Positions 18,677-57,636 of a DNA stretch of 64,000 nt are shown one piece after another (position 1 is the first letter of the stretch; every line of letters starts with the position of its first letter). The position numbers and the translations under genes are program-made. The stretch spans positions 5,575 to 69,574 of the forward strand of contig JAHLTZ010000063.1 in NCBI GenBank assembly GCA_025786725.1, written 5' to 3'. The stretch comes from Syncephalis fuscata S228 (taxonomy: Eukaryota > Fungi > Zoopagomycota). The notes below the pieces were generated by a model, which was not told where the DNA came from, made no database searches, and saw nothing but the letters and a program-made list of their open reading frames with translations.

Positions 18677-18782
18677 TCTGCATCGTTTTATCGTTTTATC
18701 GCTTTATTTTTGACAATAGCACAATTGATCTTAATAAATAGACTATATACCAATTTATTCAATGTCAAATGACCTATTACAC

Positions 18783-20280
18783 TTAGTATTCTCCTTGATC
18801 GGGAAATGAGCCCAATACACGAACTTCCAAGCAATAAGCTTGAATATCAGATAATGCTTTAGCCAAATTGGCATCTTCTGAATGGCCAATACATTCAATG
18901 AAAAAGTAATAATTCCATGGATTCTGTAGGGATGGCCGTGAATTAATACTTGTCAAATTAATGCCGTTATCTTTAAAGCTACGTAAAGCATCACAAAGAG
19001 CACCTGGCTGCCGATGATCCACTGTAAATTTCACTAGCGTCTTATCTTTACCAGTTGGCTTATCCGACTCGGACCCAATAATAAAGAATCGTGTAATATT
19101 GTCTAATTAACATTAGTTGGCTGTTTATACTTTCATTGTTATTGCCAACTTGCCTGATCTATCTTGAATATCTTCTTGGATAATGGATAGACCATATAGT
19201 TTGGCGCACATTGTACTAGCAATCGCTGCTGTATTTACTTCAGATGCAGCCATTTCAGCAGCACGTGAGGTAGATGCCACGTTGATACACTCCACCGATG
19301 GCAAATGTCGACTTAGCCATTCTTTCGTTTGACCAAACGCTTGTGGACTAGTAGAAATAGTATTTTGATAAATAAATAAACAATTAAACTATATAATATC
19401 ATTCCATAATACTTACTGACTATAGACACGTTTAATTGCATTTAATTGATAGTTGGATAGTAAGGCTTGTCGCACCTAACTAATTGATTAAAAACGTATA
19501 AGTAGCATTTATAACAGCTTACTTTAAGATAAGTTTCTGCACGAATATGCACAGGTGACGTACGAAATCGATCAAGTGTTTGAATAACTGTGCCAAAAGT
19601 TGAATTTTCAAATGGAACAACACCATACGTTGTTTGATTAGTTTCTACAGCGGTAAATACATCTATCGATACAGTTAGTATAAATCACTATAATATAAAT
19701 ACATTTACCATCAATAGTATCACGCGGTGAATAAGTGACACTATCACCAAATCGTTTATTCGATACCTATTATATATATATATATATATATTAGATACTC
19801 ATAGCTAACATGGTGATTAATACTATAGCTATTGATATTTACCTCGTGCGAGAAAGAACCGCGCGGCCCAAGATATGCTACAATTACTTCTTTTTGCAAA
19901 GAAATAGAAGCTGACATGATTTCTCGGTAAATAGCTTGCAATGCTTGATCCGATAGTGGTCCACTATTCAAACCGGCCACCTAAACGACATTATTAATAC
20001 TAATTGATATGCTGTTATTAATGTAGTAAACACGCCTTCACCTTACCCGTTCAAATACTACGCGCTCCTGTGTAGGCACATACACTTGTACTTCACTGTT
20101 GCTATATATAAAAAGGTTAGCCGGCCATTTTACCATATCTATTACTTACGGGTTTGTTTCTTGTAGTTCGTGTCGCTTTTGCAAGCCTACTTCAAGAGAA
20201 TAGCTAGCTCTTTCATTAAGTAGCGTTACAATATGGTCGTCTAACGACGCAATCTTCTGCCGCAGCTGTCCCAAGTCCAT
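18783..20280 (-). CDS. pheA: Bifunctional chorismate mutase (AroQ) / prephenate dehydratase with ACT domain (P-protein)
   Basis: MDLGQLRQKIASLDDHIVTLLNERA (CM). AIYREIMSASISLQ..VAYLGPRGSFSHE, GVVPFENSTFG, VYSHPQAFGQ and DNITRF (PDT). PGALCDAL...INLTSINSRPS..PWNYYFFIE (ACT). Confidence 0.93.
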
Positions 20281-20413
20281 AGTGTTCTACTTGAGCATAT
20301 TAGTCGCTTATTGCCTAGTACTGTTTACAATGTATTACTTCTGGTACAAACTATCTCGCAACCGTACACGCTGTAGTGTGAATGAAGGGGTGGTGAGCCA
20401 ATTTGAGTCCTCC

Positions 20414-20420
20414 TGAGTCA
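20414..20420. promoter_or_regulatory. Gcn4/CpcA consensus site TGAGTCA upstream of pheA
   Basis: Perfect TGA(C/G)TCA about 135 bp upstream of the pheA ATG, with a near-match TGAGTCC immediately before it. Confidence 0.45.
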
Positions 20421-20715
20421 GGCCAATACAATTAGTAAAATATAAAAAAACTGATATTTTCATTCAAATTCTTTTACAACACCACAACTGTTACTATCAC
20501 TACTACTGCTGCTACTCTACTGTTGTTATTGTTATTACACTTCTGATCTAGTTTGTAGCTACTATCGCTTCATATTGTTCAGCTAGGCATTACTACAAGT
20601 AATACAGCTACTGTTATCGCTTTACTAGGATACTTATTGCTGTTTTACCTTTTGATCTCGCGTGATCCAGCTATACTATCTTTATCAACCAGTGCTACCA
20701 CTTGTACCGTTGACT

Positions 20716-21566
20716 ATGGCTGTTCGTGCTCAATTTGAGAATACCAACGATGTTGGCGTGTTTGCCAAATTGACCAATGCTTACTGCTTGGTCGCCGTTG
20801 GTGGTTCAGAAAACTTTTACAGGTAAGCTACAAACTCCATTAAATAGCTAGCTTTTTATTTAATTTTATATAGTGTATTTGAAAGTGAATTAAGCGATGT
20901 TATCCCTATCGTGCACACTTCAATTGCTGGCACACGTATCGTCGGTCGTCTTACTGCCGGTATGTTGTCTATTTAATGCTACTGTAGAATAGATGCTAAC
21001 ACTTTATTTATAATATTATAGGTAATCGACATGGTCTGCTTGTACCAAGCACGACAACCGACCAAGAGCTACAGCACCTGCGCAATTCGCTGCCTGATAG
21101 CGTGGCTATCCAGCGCATTGAAGAGCGTCTATCGGCACTTGGCAACGTTATTGCCTGTAACGACTATGTCGCTCTTGTCCATCCGGATATTGATCGTGAA
21201 ACTGAAGAGATTATTGCCGATGTGCTAAAGGTCGAAGTGTTCCGTCAAACGGTCGCCGATCAAGTACTTGTCGGCAGCTACTGTGCCCTATCAAATCAAG
21301 GAGGTCTTGTGCATCCACGCACTTCAATTCAGGATCAAGAAGAATTGTCTTCGTTATTGCAAGTGCCACTTGTGGCCGGCACAGTTAACCGTGGTTCCGA
21401 TGTTATTGGCAGCGGTTTGCTCGTCAATGACTGGTGTGCATTCGCTGGTCTAGACACCACAAGTACAGAAATCTCTGTAGTGGAGCGCATCTTCAAACTG
21501 CAGAATGCACAGCCTACCGCCATTGTTAATGAGATGCGCGATTCACTTATCGACACCTACTCATAA
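20716..21566 (+). CDS. TIF6: Translation initiation factor eIF6
   Basis: [26 protein letters not shown], two introns, then [24 protein letters not shown]...[13 protein letters not shown]. Confidence 0.98.
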
Positions 21567-21710
21567 ATGATTACAAGCGCTGGCCTATGTCTTTTTTCCC
21601 TACAAACTGCGCACAGACTTTCACATTATAATACCAACAACAGTATAATATAGAAAAAGAAACAGTTTCTTATTACTATGCTACACCCGTGTACACTCGC
21701 GCATTGTCGC

Positions 21711-21711
<1 letters not shown>

Positions 21712-21752
<41 letters not shown>
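21712..21752. repeat. (TTA)n microsatellite
   Basis: About 13 perfect units between the converging 3' ends of TIF6 and the Med28-like gene. Confidence 0.95.
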
Positions 21753-21772
21753 GTATCAGCTATGATTGTATT

Positions 21773-22259
21773 TTATAAGTTTGTCAGTGCAGCATTATTT
21801 GTAAAGCTATCGTTATTAGTATTAGACTGGTGGCTAGCATCCGTTGTAGGCATTTCAAGCCAGGCTTCCCAGCGTATTAATGCTTCATTGGCCTCGCTTA
21901 GTAGTTTCTCTTTTAGTTCAATATCCCGTTGAACACTTTCAATTTCCTAAATGTCAAATAATAAAGCTAATTAGAACAAATGTAATATAGATCTATAGCA
22001 CGATATACTTACATTTACCAGCTGAAGTGTAGGTGTCTCTTCAGCCTTTTGACGTGCCAATTCCTGGCTTGTAATCCATTGTTCAAACCATTTGACGCTC
22101 GTCATAAACTGGTCTGTAGCCGGTTGTGTGTCTAGTCGTTTATAGAACAGTTAGTACTCTGCATTCTCACCTGTACTAATAGTGTATACCTGTTCCATTA
22201 TTGATAGTCTGTCCTAGTAATTGGAAGGCATTATTCAGCGATTCCAACCGTGCTTCCAT
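21773..22259 (-). CDS. Small helical protein, Mediator subunit Med28-like (not in ORF track)
   Basis: Three exons with canonical introns: MEARLESLNNAFQLLGQTINNGT|DTQPATDQFMTSVKWFEQWITSQELARQKAEETPTLQLVN|EIESVQRDIELKEKLLSEANEALIRWEAWLE...NL*. Confidence 0.65.
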
Positions 22260-22441
22260 ATTGATAGCTTAAAAACAATGTAAATAGAAGGAGGAGAAAA
22301 GTCGATAGGCAAGTAATAATATTGTGTAGAACAAATTTATTGATAATAATCATAGCGCGCTTATTTGAATCTTGGAAATAAATCGTTCTTATTATCATTT
22401 GTAACAATGGTAACGCAAGCAGTAGTCAATGCCATTCAATC

Positions 22442-23759
22442 TTATTCGCGCCCACTGCGATAAAGCGCTTCCTGTGTTACTTGCATCTCATCAATCTCTG
22501 GTGCTAGATCTTGCAATAGTTCATAAGTGTCCTTGAAGTGGGCTAACTGAGCCGCGACCATATCAGCCAAGTTACGTAGTGGTTCAGGCTAAAATGATAA
22601 TAAATATAGTAGACTATTAGCGTTTATAACCAATACAATTCGTAAAACTTACACTTTCAATAACTGCACGCATTACTGAAGTTGCCTCTTCTACTATAGT
22701 AACAAATTCATCTTCGGCCTTTTCCACTTCTTCTCGTAGCTATAAAAATTTAATGAAATATTGTTGGTATTATCATAGACTATTGAATAAATAGTACCTG
22801 TGATTCGCGGTCTGGTGTAGTCGCCTTGTAGCGTGTCTTGCAAGCATCCAAGCGTACACGGGCCCCTTGTACTCGTTTACGTGCATCCTATATTACATTG
22901 CCATTAGCGATAACAGTTGTTGTTAATAAATACTTGACTATTTACCATAGCATTTTGAATACCAGCATGAAGCGTTACTTGGAATGGCTGGAAGAATTTG
23001 TCCGTAACTTCTTTGCACTAAAGTATCATTACTAATAAGTTCTATGGATATATTCATTATTATAATTTACCATCTTCAATTCAGAGTCGCCAATCTTTTC
23101 CGAAACAGTAGCGTATTTGAACAGAGCAGCACCTAGCAAATTGATAAATTAACACCAGTCCAATTATCACTGCTCTATAAACATGAACTACTTACCAAGT
23201 GGCTCTTCCAATCCAATTTGATCTGAACCTTGATTGCAGGCACGAGCCATGGCTTGGTGTAGATTCTTTGGCTGATCTTCAATACCGCCTTCTTCAGTGG
23301 CTGTCACATCAGGTCCCATGGCAAAAGTCTGCACACGTGTAGCTACACTGCGCATTGTCTCCTGAAACTCTTGTGGTTCTTTGAAGCTAGGTTGAGCATA
23401 CGAGCGAGTTACTCGTAGCATAGATAGGTGAAGATTGCGAATAGCATCGACTCGCTAGACATATTCCATAAGTAATAAGGTTTAAGCGTCATCTAATCAG
23501 CACAGCTACTTACATGTTCCAAATCCTTGTAATCTTGAGGCAAATCGGTCAATTGTTCGACATTACCAAGTCTCTCTTCTGTCCACTATACAAGTACAAC
23601 ATATAACGTTTAGAACCCACCCAGAAAGTATAGTTTTGTACTTGATAGTGCTAGTGCTACTAAGTAGTGTATGGGATTTACCTGTACAGCTTGGTTCAAT
23701 CCGCGGCTCATCTGCTGAGCAAGCGGATTCAGTTTATTAACAAATTGGTTAAAGTTCAT
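22442..23759 (-). CDS. GVP36: BAR-domain protein, Gvp36-like
   Basis: MNFNQFVNKLNP...|WTEERLG...TDLPQDYKDLEH|RVDAIR, PKNLHQAMARA, RKRVQGARVRLDACK, AEDEFVTIVEEA, ending EMQVTQEALYRSGRE*. Confidence 0.85.
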
Positions 23760-25002
23760 CGTGGAATGTGGTATCGTTCAAGGAACAGCTGCAGCGGTGG
23801 CGATGGCCGTACAAATAGTAGTAGGTCAAGGAAGGTGGTTAAAGTAGCTGGTTGCCAAGACTAGAGAAGGGTGAAAAGAAGGACGAGCCGAAATGGTCGT
23901 CATCAAATTAAATTAAAATTCCTGAATAGAACGCTTTCAATACTAAGCCAGCCTTTACGGTACAATTTATTTAATAACAAAAAGGATAACCAGCTTACTA
24001 CGACATCATTTATTGAATCAGTTTATTCTATGGCCGATTTAATGAAACAGATAGTATAGATCAGCACCATGCACTAAATGATTGGATAGTAAAATGGAAC
24101 TTGCCCAGTAATACTAAATATCCATACTATGGCATCTTTAATTAGTAACTTTGTAATAATGATATGCAGATATTATTCAAAATAAAATACAAGTTTAAAA
24201 CAATACTAAATTATTCCACAAAGCATTTCATAGTAGTCTTGGTATACGTGCAGAATATAACAATAAAATACATCTTGCGATATTTCATTGTATATGAACA
24301 ATGGATTAATGGTGTTATCGCAGTCTTTATTATTATTTAGTCCAGATCAAGGTGATTCGTCGACTAATGTTACTACAGCACTGTAGCACCAGTCAAACGA
24401 TGCATTCATGTATAATTATGTGATACAACAACAATAAATAGGTTAGTTATTGGTATCCAGTAATTAGTGTAATGGGCATAAATATAAAGTTATTAATTTT
24501 ATAATATGGAATATTAGCAATTTACACAATAATAAGTAGGTCAGTTATTGATAAGCAAATGTGCTTATTTAAATAATAGAATATATAGCGTATACTATTT
24601 ACTTATTCATTTGGTAAATATATGGTAGTAGTACAATGATACAAGTACCAAACATTTGAATAAATAGAAATATAAAGCCAAAAAGCATATTTAGTTAATT
24701 GGATAATTTATACTTGACTAAATCCCTACTAATCATGTGTCTTAATCTATTGTAATATGCAGCTTGTGTCGTATTGGGTTTATTTGTGTAAATAGGCGAT
24801 AATCATGCGTAAACCAATAAAAAGACTACCTTTATACTGCCGTGTAACCCACATGATTCTATATTTTGTATCCACAGTTAAATGCCGGTAGTCCAAAGTA
24901 TGGCACTGTAACATTCAAAGCCTCTCTTCCTTACTATTATTCGTACATATATATATATACCACTCGTATAAACATCTATTACTGTTGTATTCAAGATCTA
25001 TA

Positions 25003-25237
25003 ATGCGGCGTTTCTTCATTGTATCCTGCACTATTCTACTGTTTGTGCTAGCCAGTATCACTACACTTGATGCGTCTCCCATTGGAGTCGATCCAAACAA
25101 CGCTCGTGTGATTAGACGCTCACCTGAAGATGGTAAGTCTTTGAAATAACAAATACATTTGTGACTAAATAGATTGTATCCTCTATATTACCGCCAACAA
25201 AAGCTTCCAAGCTACAGCGTACTGCAACTTGATTTGA
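25003..25237 (+). CDS. Small secreted prepropeptide, 64 aa, spliced (not in ORF track)
   Basis: MRRFFIVSCTILLFVLASITTLDASPIGVDPNNARVIRRSPED|DCILYITANKSFQATAYCNLI*. Intron 25133-25172 (GTAAGT...GACTAAATAG). TATA-like motifs just upstream. Confidence 0.7.
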
Positions 25238-25688
25238 AAGTAGTCTTTATTTCCTCAATCCTGCCAAATAGCCAGTGTTTATTTTAATCCTACATTATAG
25301 TCTGAAATTAAACATCAACTATTTAATAATAAACTATTCTAATCGCTGGATTGATACCTATACCTATACCTATACCTATACACATTATTTGAATAACACT
25401 TATATTGTATTAATGGTCTACTGATAAAGATTACAATGCTGACCAATAAATAGGCGCAGTTTTAATTGCTTTGTGACATTAGCAAGAGACATGAGACAAA
25501 TAAGATATAACAACAAAATACGCCTCATGGATACATCACGTCGTAATAGGTTGTTGTCGCCGTAATGGGCGGCGTCATAAGCGATCAATAAGAGATAAGA
25601 ATATGAAAAATGCCAACAAGATATAAACTAGAAATAGTAGGGAATTCGATAATATAAAATGGATTACAGGCGCTTATCAGTCGATTGT

Positions 25689-27217
25689 CTATTCAATAGA
25701 CCAGCGTTGGTCTCGCAAATGCGGGTCACTGAAAGCATGACCACCATTACCAAGTTCATAATCGGTATGGTCTTTGTTTCGTTGTACTAGATACATATAC
25801 ATTAGCGCTCATGCTTGTTATAGATAACTTTTACTACTTACATCGAATTTTCAAACCTTTACCGAAATTCTTCAGAATAAAGAATGAAGTGGCAAGCAAA
25901 GCAACGCCCATAAGCAATGTGATGACCGCTATCAATAGCAATTTTATAGCAATAGTATATATCGTTAGCCATCTATCTTGATCAAACAAAGTTACTTACC
26001 GAATAGTGTAAGAAAGATACGAGCACCGGTATATAAGTCGCAGTTATTAGTTTTTCCAGTGCTTGATTTACATGGGTGATCCAAAATAATATTCCTATTA
26101 TAAATCTTTGCCAAGTAATATATCAGATAGGTCATTGTACCAACAACGCCAACCACAAATGCATAGATGCCATATCGGCTTTCTACTCGAGCTGCCCAGA
26201 ATCCCACAACAAATATAAGAATCGAGCCACTGATTGAAATGACCGTATGTAGAATCATGTTATTATGATCATCATTGTAGTAAAATAAATACCAAAGCTG
26301 TCCTGCAAATGCCAAAAAAACAAATATACCAAATTTAAGAATGGTTACAAAAATCTGGTAAAGTCGGTACATGCCTATATTAATAAATAGTCCATCAATC
26401 ATTGATAAGATTAGTATCCCAATAACATACACACACACATATATATATATATACATACGTCGTATATTAAGATCAGCACCAATTTTCTTATAGATCCGCC
26501 AGCCAAACTCTTGAAATAAATGCCATGCCTGAAATGCAAAAGTAATAGCCAGAACAGCCATCACAACAATAATGGCGATTTCTAGACCCATCGATGCATG
26601 ATGAACATAGCTGTTTACGTTTGTCCGTAGAGTTTGAATATCTTTTTCAACGATCATATTCGATGTTTGCCAAAGTTGTACCACTGAGTAACAAAGACTG
26701 AGAAAGTTAAAAATACCAAGTCCAATGATCTGAATTGTATCTTGGCGAAACACCTAATAATACCAATCAATATCATCGTATTTACAGTATTACCTAGTAG
26801 TAATAATAATACACTTACCGCATCGATACAAAGTACAAATTGGAATACTTGAGCCACGATAAAAATCAAATGATAGGCCGAAATAATTGCTACTTTTTGT
26901 AGATTTGCATCATTGCCCAGAAGCATATAGTATGTATCAATAAATCCTGATTCTTTTCGATGAATTTTGTAAACGTTGGCCTCCATTGTAATAATCACTA
27001 CTGCTTGTATGATAGAAGATAGCAATGCTAATCTTACATATAATGAATTTTTACCATTCTATAGTGCAAATATATTAGATATCTTGACTAGATATATTAG
27101 ATAGATAACACTTGCCTGTCCTAAAAACCAATGGTTCTCCAATGGTACAAACCGTCCAATCTTGCGAGTAATAGGACTTCGACTGCTACTAGAGCCCGGA
27201 TTACGGCTTAATGCCAT
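25689..27217 (-). CDS. Multi-pass membrane protein, UPF0658 (Golgi) family-like
   Basis: YHLIFIVAQVFQFVLCIDA, QDTIQIIGL, LFQEFGWRIYKKIGADLNIRR, NFGKGLK and C-terminal RWSIE*. The first intron is GC-AG. Confidence 0.8.
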
Positions 27218-28366
27218 CGTTTCCACCTATAATAAATAGGGAAACCAACAATAGTTGCTACAATATAACTGCCAATCCTAAATCAATCTAGTATTAATTA
27301 TATAGAACAACTACATAATATAGTTAATATATTACCAATAATGCTATTCAAAGGCCAAAGGCTACCGCTAACTATTCTCTTATCTTCGTTGTCGTTGCAG
27401 TGGTTGTTATTGCAGTTGTTGCAGTGGTTGGTTGGTTATTGCTATTACTACTAATAGACGAATGAATCACTGCGTGTATTATGTCTTCAACAGTCGGGAT
27501 TTACTTTGATGATCAATTGGCAAATGCTAATATACAATCCTATAGGTGCGCCTGCGCTACAATAATCAAATGACTATTATTAGTCAAATAGTTGAGTAAA
27601 TTTGAGTATAGCGTGTCAAATCCATGTGGAAAAGGAGAAAAGGGGAACATACTATCTATGGCCATGGTGACAAGCAGTACTGACAAGACAACAAATGCCA
27701 TCAACAACAACAACAGTCCTGCCTATTGTTCTACCATTATTGTCACTATTACCACCATGATATACACCATATACGCCATAGAACATGAATAGTTATCACC
27801 AAACGAGTATTCACTATCAGGTGTGTCGTCATTCCGGTTTCTATAAGATGACTTACCACGCTAAAAAGTCCCGAAATGTCAATAACAAAAAAACACGAAG
27901 AGTCAACACGCTTCGATAGAGACAAAAGCAATACAGCCACAACACACTCAAGAATAAGGCCAAAGAAGGAGAGAGAAAAGCTTTAAGACTATGCTATTTA
28001 ACCGAAAACTCCGACTTTTGAAGATGTCAGGTCACTTGACCAATAAACGCCTTGTTGTTATCGCCTATGAATAAAGAAAAGTGCTGCTTCACCTGGTTGT
28101 AGGGTGTAGGTGTAGTAGTGGTAGTAGTAGAAACACTCGTCGTAGAACAAGTGGAAGAGGGCTAATAATAAAAATATACCCTTTGGTGTGTGTCTACTAG
28201 CACTACTACAAACCAAACGATAAATGTTTTTGGATAGAGATACACGGCCTATGCTGTATCAGGGAGAGCAGACACGTAAGGAAAGAAAAGGATGACAATG
28301 CAAACGTGAAGAAAATTGAATGCCAAAGTAATTGCGCTACAAGCAATAAACCAGTATGAATATTGC

Positions 28367-28397
<31 letters not shown>

Positions 28398-29276
28398 CTA
28401 TGAGTATGGTGGTGGTGGTAGTTGGTTATTGTTGTGGTGGTTGGTTATGTGAGGGTGATAAAAGAAAGAGAATGAAAATAGTGTAGAGGAAATGGATGAA
28501 TTTAATCATAAACTATTCACTGGTCATAACACCTTTGTAGATATAAATATCGATGATATCCTAACTACCCATACACCACTATGTTAAATAGTAACGTGTA
28601 TTAGATTGACTACGGTGTGGGTATACGTTTATAAAGTTGTTGTTTAACTATTACTGTATAGCTTGGAGGATAAAAGGAATGAGGAAGGCGAATGAGAAAG
28701 GCGAATAGAGAGGGGAAAGTATTCAAGACTAGAGTTGAAACAAAAAGACCAGCACTGTTATTTCTTTTCTATATAGTGATACGGATAATAAACTAGGATA
28801 GAACTGAAAGTGCCAAGTAAACCAGAGTATATAAAAGTAAAGAAAGCGGAGCATTGAATACGCTTTTGCTAAATGGTATCCGTGTTTTATCTATTAGTAC
28901 AATACTTGAAAACATTTTGTACCACAAACGTGCTAAAGTGTGGCATGGCAGAATTAGCCATTGCATAGACAACGATTGATCAATACAAGTATAAACAAAG
29001 AAGTACATCCACTCTTTACAATGATGTATCTACTGCATAATTATTTCTATTATGTCTAGGCTATAATTAAATTGACAGTATTTGTACTGCACATGAGTTG
29101 TTGGTGTAATGGTAATTGTAGTGGTGGTTGGCTAAGTGTGAGCTTGAATAAAGGAAAAAAGGGTTATAACTATACTTTACCATATAAAGTAATACCATTT
29201 ATTCTCACCATTAGTTGGCGGAGTTGTTGTGGTGGTTAAATAGAAAGCTTAAAATGATTGATTTATACTAATTAGA

Positions 29277-31088
29277 TCATGTGGATTGGGAAGCCCAACG
29301 AAAGTAATTACAGTTATATTCACTATTCGTATTGCTATTGGTGTTAGTGGGTCCAATGGGCCTAATTAAATATATTATAATTAATACATGTATTTAATAG
29401 TTTCATTAATGAAAAGTTACCGTGAACATGTCCAAAAATGTCTTCCTTGGTGTAGACCTTTTTTGCGCACAACTTTTCTTATGCACGGTTCGTTGTGTCC
29501 ACGGCAATTGGGTGGCACAGGGGGTTCAAACAGTTGTTGCCACACCTCTTTGTTGGCAGATGCAAGTGATGAGTTGACTTGATTTATAGTACTACTACCA
29601 CTACCACTATTACTAGTAGATGGATTATAAATATTATTAAGGGTTAATTCAGTGGATAACGCTTGTTTTTGCTTCTCGTAATCTCTCTCTTCCTTCTCTG
29701 ACGTATTCATTCGTTTAGATAGAAAGTTAAATTTATCTAACGTTGCCTGTTGTGGTTTCATCTTTTTAACGTGACTATTTTGTAGAGAGGATATTGCTAT
29801 GTTAGAGATGGGACGTTTTGTACTAGTCTTATGCTCCTTATTAACATTTGCTATTTCTATTGGTTGTGCTTGTGGTTTAGACAATTGGTTGAAATAGGCG
29901 GACAATGAGGTTTGTTTGCCCGTATACTCGGGGTAATAACGTGTACATAATGCTTGCCAATCATTACCAATAGTTGGTGTTGCAACAATCATGGGTCCTA
30001 ATAATGAGGAATCTAGTGTAATGGTAACGGGACAGTGATCTGATCCTTTTATTGATTGTAAAACATTACATTCTGTAACTGTTTTCATTAATCGAGGACT
30101 CATAAGTACATAGTCAATACGGGTGCCTATTCATATAAGTTGAGTGTATACTAATGGATATAGTCTTACCGAAATTAGAAGCACTAGTCGTAATAATAAA
30201 TAACTTTTAATAAATAGTTTTTATACAAAACAACTTACCGACTATTCAATCTTGTATTCCAACATGTATATAGTTTAGATGAATCATTAGGATAAAAGTG
30301 GCGCACTACATCCACTAATAAACCATTATCATCCTTATTAAACGATGTTAATCGATGTAGCCATTGTCGAAATGGTTCTTGCTCAAACGAACACGGTTCA
30401 CTATTTACTTTACTATACTCTTCTTCCCATCCAATGGGATCACAATGGTCTAATTTTGTAGGTGCAATATTCAAATCACCTACTAAACACACTTCTCTAT
30501 GTTTTATTCGTATCCAATAATGAACTATTTGTTCTAATTGATGACAAAATAACCTTTTAACAGATACACGTTCTGTATCCATCGCAAATGGTACATAAAC
30601 ATTTAATAGAATAAATGGACCTGTATCAATCATTATTAGCCGGCCTTCTTTTTCCATAACATCATAGAATTTATCATCATTGCTAAATGGCTGTATTTCT
30701 TTTTCTTTCTCTTTCTCCTTATTCTTATGGTCGTATATATATTGATATTTTGTTGATGCATATTGTACTTTTAAAGGTGCTGCATTATTGATAAATGTTG
30801 CTACACCTGAATAATTGATACGGTGGCGTGCATAGGCATAATAGGCATCATATTGCGGTACTATAGCTAGTTCCATGCTTAATTGTTCACGTTGCATTTT
30901 ATGTTCTTGAATACAGCAAATATCCGCCTTTAATACGTTTTCCAATAATTCCTAGTATTGTTTGCTATATTGACTATACATTGAATGTAGACTAAGTAAC
31001 TTACATGTAGTGTTGTATTTGTATCGCACCATGGTGTACGCTTGAATAAAGCACGTAGTCCATTGACATTCCAGGTCACTAACTTCAT
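29277..31088 (-). CDS. APN2: ExoIII-family AP endonuclease 2 with GRF zinc finger
   Basis: MKLVTWNVNGLR, CIQEHK, NYSGVATF, EGR, LVGDLNIAP, YTCWNTR, GTRIDY and GSDHCPV. PIP-like QTSLSAYF. GRF finger CRGHNEPC...GRHFWTCSRP...CNYFRW. Confidence 0.96.
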
Positions 31089-48576: not shown

Positions 48577-50868
48577 TTAAACACTAACATCTAGTCCAAT
48601 GCTTTTAAGCATCTTTGAGCCATGCAGACTAAGCCAGTAGTCTGCAACCAAAGACACGCGCAAGTTTTCGCGCTTTGCGTATTTGTGAAAGACCTGTCGA
48701 CAATCGGGTTGGCTTTTGAATAGAGAGTGCACTAGTGTAAAGCTAGTATTGTACAACTGGCGCACTTCAAAGCCGGATGCTTTGGCATGGTTTTTTGTCT
48801 ATTGTTCCATATAAACAATAGTGATTAGCCTATTGTATAATATCACCATTGCTAATAATTACTTACCCATTCTTGCTTTCCTAAAATGCCACGGGCCAGA
48901 TAATAAGCACTGGCCGCAAGAGTGGAGGTGGACACTAAAAGAAACCGATGATCCAGTAGAGCTACTTCTAGTAGATATTTAGCCATAGCACGGATTTCCT
49001 TGTCCAAACTGTCAACGATCGATAGCTGACGTATAAAGTTGAGTGGGCTAGGCCAGCCAAATTCGTAGCCTAGTATGCTAGCAATGTATCGTTCGGACGA
49101 TTTTAAATCTTCAACGGTAAGTGTATTTCCACTCAACTCTGCAAATGTGCTAAATGCTGGCACACAACGTTCTTCGTACTTGCAAGCCAATATTAAACTG
49201 CCAGCACCGACTAATTGTAGTCGCTGTATTGATGCGTTCTTTTTGCTCAAAAAGCGGTCAAGAATATTAACACTAAGAAATAGTGTTTCTGGTAGCAATT
49301 CTAGCTTATGATGGACTTCAACCATCCAATCGATCAACTGTGTTCGCATATGCCATTCCAACTGTGTCTGTCGACTCATATAATTAGGATCAGGATGGTA
49401 TTTTTTCTAAATAAACGTTAATCGATTAGTTATTAGCCTGATTGTATACTTACTTCTAGCTCAAGCATGTATTTAATAATGTCCTTGGCATATTCAGCGA
49501 CATACATTGGATCATCTTCAATGTCCTGTTGATTTAAAGATGGCCGCTCATTACGTGTTCTTGTTTCTGCCGCTGCTTCTTCTTCTTCTGCTGCCGCTGT
49601 TGCCTTATTATTAGTAGTAGTTGTAATAGTTTTTCTAATTGGCCGTTGAGGCTCAGTAGTTGTAGTGGTAGTTTTTGGCGTTTTGCTTTTAGTAGCTTTT
49701 GGACTATCTGTTTCACTGGTAGCATATCCAGCATCCGAGTGAGTTCGTGCAGCTTTATTGGTGGCATGCGACGACATTGAATCAATACTTAGCATTGATA
49801 ATCGAGATGATGGACAAGGACGTGCATTAGGTAGTAGTCCATCCTTGTAGGTAGCTATATATCCTGGCGATAGCTCTTCTTCCACTTCGTAATCAGAGTC
49901 AGGGTCTGACGAGTGGCCAGGTGGTGGAGAGGATGCCGGCGTAGTGGCCGGCTCTTTGCCTTTACTATTACTATCCGCAGCGCAATAAGGGATGACTCCA
50001 TTGGCTGTACTGAATCATGTCCAGTCGATGTGGACGGGCGATGGACTTGTCGACTCACTCGAGATACATTTGGTGAAATTATCATGTTGTCGGCCGAGTC
50101 AACCGACTGATAAAGCTGCTCGTAGCACTCTGTTTCGTTTGAGTAGTCTTTTGTTTCGCCTGCTTGTTGGCATAAGGTTTGACAATTCTAATTGGGCGAG
50201 GCACACCATTAATTGTTTCGTACGTCGTTTGAGACGTTGCTGAATTATGCGATGATAATGGCTGTTGTTGACCTTGTAATACTGCACGACTCTGAGTAGG
50301 CTTGCCAATTTTTTGAGAACGGGTAAAATCACACGACTTTTTTAGCTAATTAATAATTGTTAGTAATATGTTATTTTGTTTTCTTTATTACTTACTTCTG
50401 ATTTGGGTGCCGTAAACTTGCTATCAAACTGGTGACCGTGGATATATTGGCATAAACACCGCTTTTGCTTTCAATAGCATAGCGTTTTGCAGATGGTTCA
50501 GCATCATTTTCTAAATCAGAACGCGCACGACGTACTGCAGGTGCAAGAGTGATCGTGGTCACAGGCTGCTGCGCCTGCTTGCTTACTTGATTGCTTTCCG
50601 CTGCAGTGGCGGTATCTTTTGCTGCACTGGACACGGCCAATGTCAATGCAGCTGCAGCAGAATCTTTAACTTCAAAACGGCCAGCGACCATTTGAGGATA
50701 AACAGCTTTACTTGAAGCTTGATCAAAACATTGATTTGACGTGTTGTCGTTCTTGTGTGCCAGACTGGCGGAGACTGGCGGAAAGCTACTGCTGGCTGGG
50801 CGGCCTTGCAATTTTCTCGTCGACGATGGAGAGAATATGTTTAGAAAGCTAGTACTGCGACTAAACAT
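48577..50868 (-). CDS. B-type cyclin (Clb/Cdc13 family)
   Basis: DPMYVAEYAKDI, MRTQLIDWMVEVHHKLELLPETLFLSVNILDRFLS, LQLVG..LILACKYEE and VFHKYA. The N-terminal region has apparent indels at about 49980-50310. Confidence 0.93.
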
Positions 50869-51870
50869 GGTGTAAACTAGATAGAAAAGCGTGTAAGCAC
50901 TCTTATCTTAACCGAGCTAAAGAGGCCTCATCTGTGTTACACCATTATCGTTTTGGATAGCTGATGCCACGCGTGCAATGTGCCCATTGGTTTTCACTGA
51001 AATGAAGCTGGGAGAGAGTCCGTTTGTATTGGCACATCCACCCACCCACACAGATACACGCACACGCACACGGACACAAATTACTTTGACAGCTACGTAT
51101 AGTAATCGTAGTAACAGCAGTAGCAACAGAAGACGGGAAATAACGACAATAACGATAACAATAATAATAAGCAGTATACCAGCCACGCACATAGCCAAAT
51201 ATTGTTTACTGCACACGTATGTATAAAATGCCATAGCACAACCAATCAGTAAAATAAAAATAAAAACTCACCAATTCAATTGGTTATTGGTGATTAACAA
51301 AAATGACAAAACTGGTGATATTGCTGTTCTTGCAAGGTGTTGTGCGTAGTTTGTAGAGTGTTTATAGACAAAAAGAATGATATATTGCAAATAGGTGTGG
51401 TATGGTGTGATGGTGTTGAGTGAAGACGACGCGTAGTTGAAAAGAAACGAGTGGCGTGTGCAGCGATAAAAGTGAATGAGTGTAAAAGTGTGCCCCGCGT
51501 GCAGTAAATTGGTTATATACGCATATCTAAAATAAGCCTTTGATAATGATTGGCTGGCAAGTAAATGTATATGGACTTGTTTAAATACAAGCCATTAAAA
51601 CAAAGGTGGAGTTGTAATTATTTCTTACGCTTTTTAGTTTTTTATTTTCTTTTTATAACTCCTATTCATTGCTAAAATAGAGAAGTAGCTTATAAACTAA
51701 ACAAAAAATGGATATAAATACGTTTTACGTATATGCACAAGAATGCCAATATAGATTAACTATTACTCCCTCCAGGGTAGTAAATAATTTTACGCGATCA
51801 ATTGTAATGATTTAAATAATTGACGAGTTAATTAAATGTAATTGAACATTGTGTCATAATAATATTAAAC

Positions 51871-52200
51871 ATTTAAATAAAGAATGTAACATGCTATTTG
51901 ATTTCATTAAACATTTGGGGATCATTATTGTTGTTGGCCATGTGTAGAAAGGTTGATCGAATATTAATAAAGCCATATAATTGCAATTCCATATCGTTCC
52001 GCAGTTGTTATTGTTGTTACTACGTACAGTGTGGTTTCTTGCATCTAAATGGTCTCTTCTATTTCCAACCTTCTACTGTTGCATTTTAGGCATATTTGCA
52101 ATGTAAGATACTCGTCTATGATGACAAAGGAAATTACTTCCACCATATGCACTAATGATAGGTTGAGTGTCGTTACCAGGAAGATCTTGTAGTGAAAGTT
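51871..52200 (-). mobile_element. Decayed Fanzor/TnpB-like nuclease 3' fragment (copy 1)
   Basis: Across frameshifts: ...QPIISAYGGSNF / FVIIDEYLTLQICLKCNSRRLE / NRRDHLDARNHTVRSNNNNNCGTIWNCNYMA / INIRSTFLHMANNNNDPQMFNEIK* (stop 51894-51896). This matches RuvC-II (DEY), the zinc knuckles and a degenerate RuvC-III WNRD. Confidence 0.78.
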
Positions 52201-53603
52201 GTAACCAGAAGATACGGCATGCCGTTGAGGTTACTTGAACAGGTGTTGATGTAAATAAGGAAAGTAAAGGCTAGGGATTGAATAGTGTTTTTTATTGATG
52301 TTCAGATACGCATGTTATTTATATTGTTATATTCTGCATTATCGTATAATATATTACTGAATAGAGCAATAAGGTAGCGATAAGAAAAAGGTAGTGAACT
52401 GAGTAAATAAAAATGTGGGAGTCAAAGTACATTAGAAATATTAAAGCCATTTAATACTAAGTCACTGTTATAAAACATACTGCCAATAAATTACTGAGTG
52501 TAATAGAAAATACAATAAAAGTCTATGTTTCTTAAATACAAGCGTAGCCATAGAAGGTGTTATTATTAAATAATAAAACATTGTTACTAATTTACCTGTA
52601 TAACTATGGTGTAAATTGCGCTATTTACTAAATGTGGTAAATAACTTAATTAGCAATAATTACATCACGTGATTGTTCCCATTTCTGGTAATCGTCAGGG
52701 TCCTTACAAAGATAGTCGTGCTTTCAGCCAAGATACGACGATCATACTATTATAATTGCTTCTAATTCGTAGCAGGAAACACAGCGCCTATAAATATTTG
52801 CGATCCACGGCCCCATATTACTTATTAAAGTAACACTGGCCCCATATCGCTTGAAGAAGAAATTGAACAGACAAGCCGTTCAAGTTCTTCCTTCGCAGTA
52901 TTCAAGACCATTTACTATAAAATGGCAACTATGTTTCTTAATCTTAATAAACATTATCTTATCTTGGTTTAAATTCTTTTTTTATTTTATTTGAATTTTG
53001 AACCTTTTGATCATTTCAGTCTTGCAGTGATTGCTAGACTGAACTGATCTTTTTATCTGAGCTAACAATATTCTAGTCATTTATTCTACTTCTGTAGAAA
53101 TTATTAATTAAAGGTTGATAATCTTTATTAATAAAAACAATTAAGTAAGTCTTATATAACACTAATTACTAACATTATAGGTCACTCAAGACCAAGCATA
53201 ATATTAGTAATCCGTTTATTATTCTACTCTTAGTGGAATAGTAACAACATAATTATATTTTAGAAGATGAACCAATAGACCAATAGTTTAAATGAATGAA
53301 TAAATAATATTTAGTATTAAAAACTGATTAACGGTTTTATTATTATTTAAATGAGATTATAGGTCTATTACTATAAACTTGCACAGTTGAATAGAAACAA
53401 CTAAATGCAAGCTTGTCAGTAAAATAATGATTCTATTGATTGCAGAGTGAGTAAACCGGAGCATTGGCCAAAACTTGGTATACAAATGGACTATGCGGCG
53501 TAGTTGTCAAATGGGCTTGCTTTTTACCGAATATATACCTAAAGTGTATTGGAATAGCGGTTTGATCGCACTACCAATGCTAATGTCTTGAAATCATAGA
53601 TTA

Positions 53604-53816
53604 TTAGCAATAACCCATTTGTTGACAATCTTCGTGACACTTCCACTTTCTAATAAGACGAGTGCAAAGCTTATTAACGCATGTATCGCAGTCCGCAGCA
53701 CCACGACGAATTAAATCTGATTTATCATCCACCATAGTTGGTTTAGCATCCACAATGGCTGTAGCGGCTATCAAAGCCACAACGACGGTGCAAACGACGG
53801 CAATAGAAAGCTTCAT
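53604..53816 (-). CDS. Small secreted Cys-rich prepropeptide (6-Cys mature peptide)
   Basis: Signal MKLSIAVVCTVVVALIAATAIVDA, pro-segment ending IRR, mature GAADCDTCVNKLCTRLIRKWKCHEDCQQMGYC. Intact and intronless. Confidence 0.88.
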   Translation of the reverse strand: MKLSIAVVCTVVVALIAATAIVDAKPTMVDDKSDLIRRGAADCDTCVNKLCTRLIRKWKCHEDCQQMGYC

Positions 53817-54161: not shown

Positions 54162-55557
54162 CTAATCATTTGCACGAGTACTGTAACAGTGTTTATAATC
54201 CAGTACATATGCGATAAAAATAGGCATATTAGTCTGTATTTCCTATTGCACAATCTAACTATTGGCGAAAACAAATATATTGTTTGGTTTTGTAAAAATT
54301 ATAATAATGTTTTTGCTGCCATTTCTACCGATTCGGTTCTCAGTATTTGCATGCATACAAAATAACACACAACACTGATACAAAAACAAGTTTAATGCAT
54401 CAAACCGGTGTTTTTATACAAGCTTTTACTGTTATACATAGGTTAGCTATATTTTAAATTATAAATGTATTGATTGGTACATGCATGCATTTCATTCGAC
54501 ACTATGCCCATTGTTATGGGGTAATCATTGTTTCGAATTCACAAATGTATCACATCCAAACATATCATGCCACATGTTGTGCAATTATCATCGTTCAAAT
54601 GGCGGCTAATCCAAATCATCTGAACTTGACTATACGATAAGTACTATTTGCAGGATAATGCATCGTGGCATTTTAAGCAATGGGACATTCCAACAAGTCA
54701 TTTTTAGCAGTTTTTCGGCTGTAAACCAAATCGCATCGGCTAGATTACACACAATACAATATGCAGACACTAGCTAGACACGCCAGAAAGCACTAGACAC
54801 TTACCAGTAATTTCGAGTATATTGTGGCTGCAGATCACATATAAACTGATAATCGTCCAAGGCCTAACTGCTGCTTACCTTTCTGAAACTTGATTTTGAC
54901 AAGTTAAATAAGATGGAATATAGAACAACAAGCCAAAGCTGAAACCAATGGAAAAACAAACGGCAGCCCAAAGACCTACTGTTTTAACCTATAACCTATA
55001 GCAAACCATTATAGTTATGCTAAGCTAAACTGCATTTATCAAAAGCTGGCTGTTGCTGATGCAGCCAGAACAGCAGCAACGTTAAACCGAGATAACACAC
55101 AGAAAACAGAGAAATGTAAATAGAACTAAATCAATGAGTTTTGGTAGTTAAATAACTTATTATTGTCGCTATAATTATAATGCTAGTTGTTTGTACGGAT
55201 AAATATTTACAATCATATTGTAATCTCTTATATGCTCACATTTACACGATCACCAATTAAGCCAACTATTGTAAGGCTTAATTTAATTATTTATCAAAGT
55301 AAGCAGCCAATGTCATACATTATTACATTGATAGAAAGACAAATCAATTGTATTTATTGGCCATTAATAAAAGCTGTATAGCTATATATTAAAATAAAAC
55401 AAAACATTGGATTGAGCGCATAATATTTATATGATCAAATCATTTTTACCTTGACTTACATATTTTGACCTCAAAGTAAAGCTCGTTTTAATTGAAGTCG
55501 CACTGCTATACACAACACAGTTAGATTGCTTCCTGATAAAATGTTGGCAATAAATTG

Positions 55558-55720
55558 ATTTAGATAAAAGAACGTAACATACTATTTAATTTCTTTGAAA
55601 CATTTGAGGTTTGTTGTTGACCATGTGTAGAGAGATTAATCGAATATCAATAGAAGCCATATGATCACAATTCCATGTCATTTTATATTTGTTGCTGTTG
55701 CATCTACGTACAGCATTACT
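55558..55720 (-). mobile_element. Decayed Fanzor/TnpB-like nuclease 3' fragment (copy 2)
   Basis: Open 45-codon frame 55720-55586, SNAVRRCNSNKYKMTWNCDHMASIDIRLISLHMVNNKPQMFQRN*. The nucleotides align by eye with 51871-52030, including about 25 nt beyond the stop. Confidence 0.75.
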
Positions 55721-56174: not shown

Positions 56175-56545
56175 CTACAGTCCAGCGACAGCACTAAGAC
56201 CTCGTGTATTGGATCTGCGAAGTAAACGGCCTATATGATCTGCTGGATTGACAACGGTCACCTTTGAAATGTTGTTATTGCTTCCTTCAGCGAGGCTATC
56301 TTTGACGCCACGTGATGATAAGCCCGTCCCAGTCGGGAACGGGACCACCGGGAGGTGGTTGGTCGTGTTGTTGATAGCTCTCCCGTTTGACGACTGGTAA
56401 GCTGATTCTGAATAGATGGATTGTTGGTGTTGATACTGGTGTGGCTTTTGTTTTTGTTGCTGTTCGGAATGTAAATGGTTGGGAAATGAATTGTTGGAAG
56501 GCCACTGAAAGGATTGCTGGGTGTTATTGCCGGTGTGAAACGAAT

Positions 56546-56576
<31 letters not shown>

Positions 56577-57636
56577 TGATTTATAGTCTGAAATCGTTTC
56601 TGTTGGCTGAACACGTGAGTTAAAGTTTAATGGTACATTCTCTCGTGTGTTATCAGTAGAAGTGATTTTAGATTCACCTGTGTCATAATACATATCATCG
56701 CTATTTGTGCCATGACTGGATGACAGTGCTAAATGATGACTGGTTGGATAAGAGCTGGGGGTAATTGCCTGGCTTTTGACGCTATTTTTGCTATTGGGCG
56801 AAATAGTGTTGCAAGCATTTACAGCGTGCAGTTGGGACGATTCACCGGGTATGGACGTCGATGATGCCCTTCGTGCGTATGAATGCTGAGACAATGTGGT
56901 GGCCAACATGGTGCGGTGAATAGCGTGAGTTGGCGGTAGCATTCGTATAGCTACTGAAAATAAATGCGATTCATCAACGGCCAGTGAGAAATCGAGTAAG
57001 CGTAGCATTTGACGTTCCATTAATGAAATCTCCGATGCTGGAAAGCCAATATGATGCTGATCCCAATGATTGTTATTTGGCCAGTAGTCGCTAATATACT
57101 TGCCGGCGATAACTAACGAGGCCAAAAATAGGCGATGTGCTGTACATGTTTGGCCACGCGCCTCTTTGGGCAAACGTGATCGCAAACGATCCAAGAGAAC
57201 GACAACACACATCAGTGTGCCGGTGCGCACTCTAGAACATCTCGAGACAAATGCAATAAATGCCTCCAAAGGTGGAGGGGGAAGGCCGGAACGGAATGCA
57301 CCAATAGAAGCGTCGATTGGCTTATTGCTGGATGCAGACGAAAGTCGATGAGAGCTATTGCGCGACCCTGACGACAAGGAATTAAGAGCAGCAGCGGGTA
57401 GCATCTCAGGAACTACGCGATTAGCAGATTCGGCCACCAGTCCTAAAGGTAAAATATATTGGTTAATACATGTTGCGATTTGGCCCATATAGTAATAGCA
57501 ACTTACTAATAAGATTATCGGAAATATCTGCAGAACACACCTCTCTCAACATTGTCGAATCAATCATGGGATTAGGCAGATTAAAGGTGTTGCCTTCGTG
57601 ACCCATAGATGCTTTAGCGCTTGATCCAGGTACCAT
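56175..57636 (-). CDS. Pho85-type cyclin (Pcl1/Pcl2 family)
   Basis: Exon 1 MVPGSS...DISDNLIR, an intron at about 57445-57506, then PPLEAFIAFVSRCSRVRTGTLM..LLDRLRSRLP...TAHRLFLASLVIAGKYISD...EISLMERQMLRLLDF. Gln-rich tail. Confidence 0.93.

What the first reader, a model, noticed from the sequence alone, without database searches (positions are those of the whole stretch)
51871..52200. Hidden fossil of a Fanzor (eukaryotic TnpB-like RNA-guided nuclease) gene
Seen in sequence: the minus strand, read across small frameshifts and invisible in the ORF track, gives PIISAYGGSNF / VIIDEYLTLQICLKC / RNHTVRSNNNNNCGTIWNCNYMA / INIRSTFLHMANNNNDPQMF*. Established knowledge: Fanzor1 C-termini run IAYGxxxF ... 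DE(Y/F)xTSxxCxxC ... HxVxxC..CxxxWNRDxxAxxNI ... RP.F (RuvC-II Glu, zinc finger, RuvC-III Asp). Inference: this is an internally deleted, inactivated copy (a stretch between the AYG and DEY motifs appears to be missing) of a Fanzor family in this lineage, so intact copies and their guide RNAs may exist elsewhere in the genome.
Basis: partly seen in the sequence, partly recalled or inferred. Interest (0 to 1): 0.85.

Follow-up and report, generated by a model that had tools for sequence, protein, structure and literature searches.

The report
Decayed Fanzor1 nuclease gene remnants
Two short, dead 3'-end pieces of a Fanzor1 (eukaryotic TnpB-like RNA-guided nuclease) transposon gene lie in an intergenic region of the mycoparasitic fungus Syncephalis fuscata. 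They are ordinary transposon debris, except that their closest named relatives come from Mucorales, the fungi that Syncephalis parasitises.

Summary
The minus strand of 51,897-52,207 reads, across frame breaks, PIISAYGGSNF / VIIDEYLTLQICLKC / HTVRSNNNNNCGTIWNCNYMA / INIRSTFLHMANNNNDPQMF.

The separate pieces hit nothing in Pfam, NCBIfam or PDB. A profile of the window's own copies found 10 proteins among 1.84 billion. Nine carry Pfam PF07282 and the same motif order. Their full-length relatives are 700-940 aa proteins of Mucorales and Umbelopsis. The profile of those relatives hits solved Fanzor1 structures: SpuFz1 at 1.8e-13 and GtFz1 at 4.7e-11.

Copy A, read through with X at its breaks, scores 68.7 bits against the family profile. 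The best of 2000 shuffles scores 9.9 bits.

Copy A is only the last ~16% of the gene. It is 5'-truncated, lacks 30-40 codons between AYG and DEY, has several frameshifts, and has lost the RuvC-III Asp and one zinc-finger Cys. A second, shorter copy lies at 55,553-55,720 (78% identical). The two have diverged neutrally.

The window is Syncephalis fuscata (100% identity to GCA_025786725.1). Nothing suggests a working nuclease or guide RNA here. Whether intact copies exist elsewhere in this genome could not be tested. Transfer between host and parasite is a lead, not a result.

The parts
52130..52207 (-). Copy A, piece 1: WLQLSLQDLPGNDTQPIISAYGGSNF. This is the segment around the canonical RuvC-II position, which is Gly in Fanzors (AFG/AYG).
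   Evidence: tblastn to P0010 428-453. HMM positions 675-703, E 0.24 alone but colinear with the other pieces.
52126..52129 (-). Deletion junction with a frame change. About 30-40 codons are missing between ...SNF and VIIDEY.
   Evidence: P0010 454-493 has no counterpart. In alignment A5, first-row (P0010:425-568) residues 30-69 have no counterpart in copy A. Reading of the DNA.
52054..52125 (-). Copy A, piece 2: VIIDEYLTLQICLKCNSRRLEIEE. It holds the relocated catalytic Glu (GAG 52111-52113, kept), TS changed to TL, and the first CxxC of the zinc finger (kept).
   Evidence: HMM E 3e-3 as an independent piece. 61-67% identity to Mucorales proteins over 18 aa.
51971..52045 (-). Copy A, piece 3, in another frame: DARNHTVRSNNNNNCGTIWNCNYMA. 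The third Cys is lost, the fourth kept, and WNRD has become WNCN (RuvC-III Asp changed to Asn, AAT 51980-51982).
   Evidence: Alignment to the family.
51897..51968 (-). Copy A, piece 4, in a third frame: INIRSTFLHMANNNNDPQMFNEIK*. Relative to copy B, one base is deleted at ~51970 and another at ~51909.
   Evidence: HMM E 5e-3. Indel positions.
51866..51896 (-). About 30 nt after the stop codon that are still shared with copy B. Similarity ends here in both copies. Inferred to be the right end of the parent element.
   Evidence: Alignments. No stable RNA fold.
55589..55720 (-). Copy B: SNAVRRCNSNKYKMTWNCDHMASIDIRLISLHMVNNKPQMFQRN in one frame, with stop TAA at 55586-55588. The third Cys is kept, the fourth is changed to Tyr, the RuvC-III Asp is kept, and Arg is changed to Cys.
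   Evidence: blastn 78% identity over 162 nt, E 4e-29. HMM E 1.2e-9.
55553..55585 (-). Copy B post-stop stretch shared with copy A.

Best explanation
These are two non-functional, neutrally decaying 3'-terminal remnants of one Fanzor1-bearing DNA transposon family in the genome of Syncephalis fuscata. The parent gene would have encoded a 600-900 aa omegaRNA-guided RuvC endonuclease. That enzyme has a DPG RuvC-I Asp, a relocated Glu in DEYxTS, a CCCC zinc finger and a RuvC-III Asp in WNRD. Its guide RNA is transcribed from the 3' end of the gene and the transposon's right end. Copy A keeps only the last ~16% of the gene. It has an internal deletion, several frameshifts, Asp changed to Asn at RuvC-III and a lost zinc ligand. 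Copy B keeps only the last ~42 codons. Neither can make a nuclease. Shown here: the homology, the damage, the neutral divergence and the identity of the host. Inferred: that the shared 3' boundary is the element's right end, and that the parent worked like SpuFz1.
For: A profile of the window copies found PF07282 proteins with the same motif order among 1.84e9 representatives. Their full-length relatives are in Mucorales and Umbelopsis. The family profile hits SpuFz1 8gkh at 1.8e-13 and GtFz1 9cer at 4.7e-11, well ahead of TnpB and Cas12f. The four pieces of copy A and copy B are the top hits of the family HMM in the whole window and are colinear. The X-joined copy A scores 68.7 bits against 9.9 for the best shuffle. 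Differences between A and B fall 6/10/7 on codon positions 1/2/3, with 22 transitions to 9 transversions and four indels. No other Fanzor homology exists in the 64 kb. The window is 100% identical to the S. fuscata assembly.
Against: The individual pieces give no hit in Pfam, NCBIfam or PDB, so the assignment rests on a two-step search. No transposon ends, target-site duplication or left end were found. No intact copy from this genome was available for comparison.
Confidence: 0.93

Rival explanations
1. The pieces are ghost-type non-autonomous elements. They are kept because their 3' ends still encode omegaRNAs that load onto an intact Fanzor1 made elsewhere in the genome.
For: Both copies keep exactly the 3' end of the gene plus ~30 nt past the stop, and they share the same 3' boundary. 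That is where Fanzor1 guide RNAs are encoded, and ghost loci are known in S. punctatus (PMC10432273).
Against: The 3' 145 nt of both copies fold less stably than their shuffles (z +1.6 and +1.2). The copies are only 78% identical, with indels. No shared left end or inverted repeat was found. There is no Rfam match. No intact Fanzor from Syncephalis turned up.
Confidence: 0.04
2. The apparent frameshifts are short introns, and the region is part of a live, spliced or domesticated Fanzor-derived gene.
For: Fanzor genes do carry introns (PMC10530073).
Against: The pieces abut or overlap within a few bases, leaving no room for introns. The RuvC-III Asp and a zinc ligand are lost. About 85% of the protein is absent from the window. 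Substitutions show no third-position excess.
Confidence: 0.02
3. The motif resemblance is chance, or the sequence is host (Mucorales) DNA contaminating or mis-joined into the assembly.
For: The single pieces have no database hit on their own. Syncephalis is grown on a Mucorales host (PMC6784888).
Against: 68.7 bits against 9.9 for the best of 2000 shuffles. Two diverged copies sit 3.7 kb apart in AT-rich intergenic DNA, between cyclin genes, on a 69.6 kb contig. That contig also carries an eIF6 97% identical to the eIF6 of two other Syncephalis species. No DNA-level match to the Mucor locus was found.
Confidence: 0.01

Closest known systems
Mucorales Fanzor1 proteins, e.g. Mucor circinelloides HMPREF1544_02846 (P0011, 912 aa) and Parasitella parasitica BD408DRAFT_429113 (P0012). 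Fanzor1 families of Mucor, Rhizopus and Phycomyces were described by Bao and Jurka 2013 (PMC3627910).
   Same: The order and wording of the C-terminal motifs are the same: AFG/AYG...VDEYLTSQICPxC...H.V..C..C.T.WNRDHMAS.NIRS.FLHMA.NN..RP..F. Identity to P0011 is 54% (copy A) and 53% (copy B) over the shared columns. They fall in the same clade with 100/100 support.
   Different: The window copies are fragments with frameshifts, lost catalytic and zinc residues, and no N-terminal 85%. The host is a zoopagomycete, not a mucoromycete. There is no DNA-level similarity.
SpuFz1, Spizellomyces punctatus Fanzor1 (PDB 8gkh), together with the partial Fz loci and ghost elements of that genome (PMC10432273).
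   Same: The family profile matches SpuFz1 over the RuvC and NUC regions (E 1.8e-13). DEY aligns with E541 and WNRD with D606. S. punctatus also carries partial Fz genes and ORF-less ghost loci.
   Different: The relationship is distant. SpuFz1 is intact and active. Spu-1 elements have 30-nt inverted repeats and a defined omegaRNA, and neither was found here.
Prokaryotic TnpB (ISDra2) and Cas12f
   Same: They share the RuvC fold, the CCCC zinc finger and the (N/D)RD..A..NI RuvC-III motif. The family profile gives weak hits (E 1e-4 to 0.03).
   Different: TnpB keeps the canonical RuvC-II Glu. This family instead has Gly at that position and the relocated Glu typical of Fanzors. Here the host is a eukaryote and the proteins are much longer.

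Membership tests
Fanzor1 | Significant sequence homology to the Fanzor1 RuvC/NUC C-terminal region | tested here: met
   X-joined copy A scores 68.7 bits and copy B 39.4 bits against the family HMM. The family profile hits SpuFz1 at 1.8e-13 and GtFz1 at 4.7e-11.
Fanzor1 | RuvC-I Asp in a DPG motif | tested here: not met
   This region is absent from both copies, and the HMM finds no further piece anywhere in the window. The relatives have GVDPG.
Fanzor1 | Canonical RuvC-II Glu replaced by Gly/Pro, with a relocated Glu ~45 residues downstream in DE(Y/F)xTS | tested here: met
   Copy A has AYG, and IIDEY with GAG at 52111-52113. The rule comes from PMC10530073. The spacing cannot be judged because of the deletion. 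Copy B lacks this region.
Fanzor1 | CCCC zinc finger between RuvC-II and RuvC-III | tested here: not met
   Copy A keeps Cys 1, 2 and 4 and has lost Cys 3. Copy B keeps Cys 3 and has Tyr at Cys 4.
Fanzor1 | RuvC-III Asp in WNRD | tested here: not met
   Copy A reads WNCN, with Asn replacing Asp. Copy B reads WNCD, with Asp kept and Arg changed to Cys.
Fanzor1 | Intact ORF of roughly 600-900 aa | tested here: not met
   Only ~100 codons (A) and ~42 codons (B) remain, with frameshifts and stops.
Fanzor1 | omegaRNA encoded at the 3' end of the gene and the transposon right end | tested here: inconclusive
   The copies share ~30 nt past the stop. There is no stable fold and no Rfam hit. No reference omegaRNA for this subfamily was available, and a Parasitella omegaRNA motif taken from the supplement of PMC10432273 was not found.
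Fanzor1 | Carried inside a transposon with recognisable ends or target-site duplication | tested here: inconclusive
   No inverted repeat or shared upstream end was found. The left end would lie in the missing part.
Fanzor2 | Closer to Fanzor2 or IS607-type TnpB than to Fanzor1 | tested here: not met
   In PDB only Fanzor1 chains score strongly. No chain named Fanzor2 appears at E<=1.
Pfam PF07282 (Cas12f1-like TNB, formerly OrfB_Zn_ribbon) | Score above the gathering threshold | tested here: not met
   The pieces give no hit even at E<=10. Eight of the ten profile hits pass the threshold and P0004 falls below it.

The most novel reading that the evidence does not exclude
The Fanzor1 transposon family reached Syncephalis by horizontal transfer from (or to) its Mucorales hosts through the haustorial parasite-host interface. 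The remnants fall with 100/100 support in a clade whose named members are all Mucoromycota. Their C-terminal identity to Mucor (54%, after decay) is within the range seen among the Mucoromycota members themselves (50-66%), although the two phyla are anciently separated.
Probability: 0.3. Interest if true: 0.6.

Novelty: new member of a known kind. Interest (0 to 1): 0.3.

Why it matters
In itself it matters little. Decayed Fanzor and TnpB fragments are expected wherever these transposons have lived, and this one cannot cut DNA or supply a guide RNA. It does show that a Fanzor1 family of the Mucorales type was once active in a zoopagomycete mycoparasite. I found no report of Fanzors in that group in the paper library searched here. 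It therefore points to the S. fuscata genome and its relatives as places to look for intact copies. It also offers a concrete test case for transposon exchange between a fungal parasite and its fungal host.

Tried and rejected
- The four pieces of copy A and copy B, searched separately, gave no relevant hit in Pfam, NCBIfam or PDB. The only results were chance-level matches to an IgY receptor, L40e and PatB.
- P0010 alone against PDB gave only a weak hit to a designed nuclease. The family profile was needed.
- P0007 in the profile search is a repetitive false positive without PF07282.
- The metagenome scan returned 69 Fanzor1-like loci, none close to the remnants at the DNA level.
- The viral-contig scan found no relative.
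- Folding the 3' ends showed no stable structure (one search failed on length).
- Rfam gave only sub-threshold miRNA-like noise.
- No inverted repeats or transposon ends were found.
- A Parasitella omegaRNA motif taken from a supplement was absent from the window and the fetched loci.
- The AU test could not show that the remnants nest inside the Mucoromycota sequences (p 0.334).
- Exact look-ups of the neighbouring cyclin ORF found no gene model on record.
- The PHO85-type cyclin was useless for placing the host. eIF6 settled it.
Read-throughs with X at the breaks were made only inside scripts.
- In one search I pasted two aligned 160-nt rows into a script. The analysis was redone from the files, and only that call is cited.

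Full report
**Observation.**
PIISAYGGSNF lies in the frame of 52270-52076. VIIDEYLTLQICLKCNSRRLEIEE lies in 52230-52048. ARNHTVRSNNNNNCGTIWNCNYMA lies in 52072-51857. INIRSTFLHMANNNNDPQMFNEIK* lies in 52007-51897. The ORF list shows nothing longer than 47 aa here. The window is eukaryotic and fungus-like, with two cyclins, MUG190-type SMP/C2 domains, MetRS, eIF6 and a SET domain.

**A second copy.**
A blastn of 51,700-52,700 against the window found one further match. Positions 51871-52029 match 55558-55713 on the same strand, with 78% identity over 162 nt and E 4e-29. This copy B reads in a single frame as SNAVRRCNSNKYKMTWNCDHMASIDIRLISLHMVNNKPQMFQRN*. Similarity continues for about 30 nt past the stop codon in both copies and then ends at the same point. 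It does not extend upstream of the AVRRC/HTVRS codons in copy B.

**Identification.**
- Each piece searched alone gave nothing relevant in Pfam, NCBIfam or PDB. That is expected for stretches of about 25 residues.
- I aligned copy B with the two matching pieces of copy A (A3) and ran that profile against 1.84 billion representative proteins.
- Ten proteins reached E<=1e-3. Nine of them carry Pfam PF07282 (Cas12f1-like TNB, formerly OrfB_Zn_ribbon). They read VDEYLTSQICPxC ... H.VL.C..C.T.WNRDHMAS.NIRS.FLHMA.NN..RP..F. The tenth (P0007) is a repetitive false positive.
- P0010 (568 aa) is full length and has GVDPG, VVVAFGAAKF, MIDEYFTSQICPLC and NRDHMASMNIR.
- Its relatives are 700-940 aa proteins of Mucor circinelloides, Parasitella parasitica, Helicostylum pulchrum, Mucor flavus, Benjaminiella poitrasii, Radiomyces spectabilis and Umbelopsis isabellina.
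- The short hits come from Thamnidium elegans, Rhizopus microsporus, Benjaminiella and, more distantly, Amoeboaphelidium.
- A profile of 17 family members (A4) hits the solved Fanzor1 structures SpuFz1 (8gkh, E 1.8e-13) and GtFz1 (9cer, 4.7e-11). TnpB, TranC and Cas12f chains follow only at 1e-4 to 0.03.

**Direct test of the remnants.**
An HMM built from A4, which holds database proteins only, was run with all filters off against all 3730 six-frame pieces of the window. Its four best hits are copy B (1.2e-9), the DEY piece (3e-3), the INIR piece (5e-3) and the AYG piece (0.24). They fall in the order of the profile, at positions 675-703, 723-745 and 775-797. The HTV piece falls at 746-775. 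The DEY and AYG pieces were not part of the query that found the family, so they are independent confirmation. Nothing else in the 64 kb matches. Inside a script, copy A read through with X at each of three breaks scores 68.7 bits against the C-terminal family HMM (E 8e-20 for Z=3730), and copy B scores 39.4 bits. The best of 2000 shuffles of copy A scores 9.9 bits.

**Anatomy and damage.**
- tblastn places P0010 428-453 (WKPLSPRDGQDERTRPVVVAFGAAKF) on 52207-52130, and P0010 494-511 on 52125-52072. Residues 454-493 have no counterpart. The junction is the four bases 52126-52129 and changes the frame.
- There is no homology upstream of ~52207, so about 85% of the gene is absent from copy A (N-terminus, WED/REC, RuvC-I).
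- Jiang et al. (PMC10530073) show that Fanzors carry Gly or Pro at the canonical RuvC-II Glu, with a relocated Glu about 45 residues downstream. AYG is therefore the substituted canonical position, and the Glu of DEY is the relocated catalytic one.
- By the alignment and the residues listed by Saito et al. (PMC10432273), that Glu corresponds to SpuFz1 E541. The Asp of WNRD corresponds to D606.
- Copy A keeps the Glu (GAG 52111-52113) and the first CxxC. TS has become TL, the third Cys is lost, and WNRD has become WNCN (Asp changed to Asn, AAT 51980-51982).
- Copy A also changes frame between the CxxC and HTV. Relative to copy B it has one-base deletions at ~51970 and ~51909.
- Copy B keeps the third Cys and the Asp, but has Tyr at the fourth Cys and Cys in place of Arg.

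**Neutral decay.**
Over the 121 aligned coding bases, differences between A and B fall 6, 10 and 7 on codon positions 1, 2 and 3. Transitions outnumber transversions 22 to 9, and there are four indels. There is no third-position excess, so both copies have drifted without selection on the protein. The 3' 145 nt of each copy folds less stably than its shuffles (z +1.6 and +1.2). Rfam gives only sub-threshold noise. No inverted repeats or shared upstream end were found. The 3.3 kb between the copies holds no recognisable coding remains apart from a 70-aa Cys-rich ORF with a hydrophobic N-terminus.

**Host.**
An eIF6 exon at 21102-21563 is 99% identical to Syncephalis fuscata eIF6 and 97% identical to that of two other Syncephalis species. 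The S. fuscata locus fetched around that gene is 100% identical to window 17716-24566. The record is GCA_025786725.1, contig JAHLTZ010000063.1, positions 23290-30140. The window is therefore positions 5575-69574 of that 69,574-bp contig. Syncephalis species are obligate mycoparasites grown on Mucorales hosts, for example S. pseudoplumigaleata on Mucor moelleri (PMC6784888).

**Relationship to the host group's Fanzors.**
- Over 80 C-terminal columns and 63 sequences (named proteins, 45 metagenome loci, and the two remnants), the remnants are sisters (ultrafast bootstrap/SH-aLRT 96/82).
- They lie inside a 16-member clade with 100/100 support whose named members are all Mucoromycota.
- Their best identity is to Mucor circinelloides P0011: 54% for copy A and 53% for copy B. 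This is within the 50-66% seen among the Mucoromycota members in the same region.
- The apparent grouping with Rhizopus microsporus P0006 may rest on the shared Arg-to-Cys change, which could be parallel CpG decay.
- An AU test does not reject a tree in which the 14 other clade members exclude the remnants (p 0.334). Many clade members are unnamed. No Syncephalis genome could be searched with these tools.
- Horizontal transfer between host and parasite is therefore a lead and not a finding. No relative was found in the viral contigs.

**Mechanism.**
Shown here: homology, truncation, deletion, frameshifts, loss of catalytic and zinc residues, and neutral divergence. It follows that nothing here can act as a nuclease. 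Inferred from the family (PMC10432273, PMC10530073, PMC3627910): the parent was a transposon-borne omegaRNA-guided RuvC endonuclease. The common 3' boundary of the two copies would then mark the element's right end, where the guide RNA scaffold ends. Partial Fz genes and ORF-less ghost loci are already known in S. punctatus, so remnants like these are an expected by-product.

**Verdict.**
The object is ordinary transposon debris of a known kind. It sits in a lineage where I found no earlier report in the library searched, and it has an untested host-parasite angle.

Noticed in passing
window 55553-55720 (-): A second, shorter remnant of the same Fanzor1 family, 78% identical to copy A. It reads in one frame to a TAA stop, and similarity ends at the same point ~30 nt past the stop.
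   Followed up: yes
whole window (17716-24566 checked): The window is Syncephalis fuscata GCA_025786725.1, contig JAHLTZ010000063.1, positions 5575-69574. S. fuscata is an obligate mycoparasite of Mucorales. All named relatives of the remnant are Mucoromycota.
   Followed up: partly
window 51983-51985 and 55667-55669; P0006, P0008: Both window copies read WNCD/WNCN where the family has WNRD. The same Arg-to-Cys change occurs in short Rhizopus microsporus (P0006) and unnamed (P0008) fragments. This is either a subfamily trait or parallel CpG decay, and it may inflate their grouping in the tree.
   Followed up: partly
window 53604-53816 (-): A 70-aa ORF lies between the two remnants. It has a hydrophobic N-terminal stretch and eight Cys residues, so it could be a small secreted protein. 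It has no Pfam hit.
   Followed up: partly
L001 2979-5327: An ENA metagenome contig carries a near-full-length Fanzor1 of this family. It is interrupted by a single in-frame stop just before VMVDEY and is annotated as two genes (667 and 108 aa).
   Followed up: partly
window 48852-50868 (-) and 56175-57488 (-): The remnants sit in a 5-kb AT-rich intergenic region flanked by a B-type cyclin and a PHO85-type cyclin. The closest database relative of the PHO85-type cyclin is only 48% identical.
   Followed up: partly
window 50950-51130: Low-complexity repeats lie just downstream of copy A. They appear as runs of RV/VR and of Leu/Ile in the ORF translations. They were not examined.
   Followed up: no
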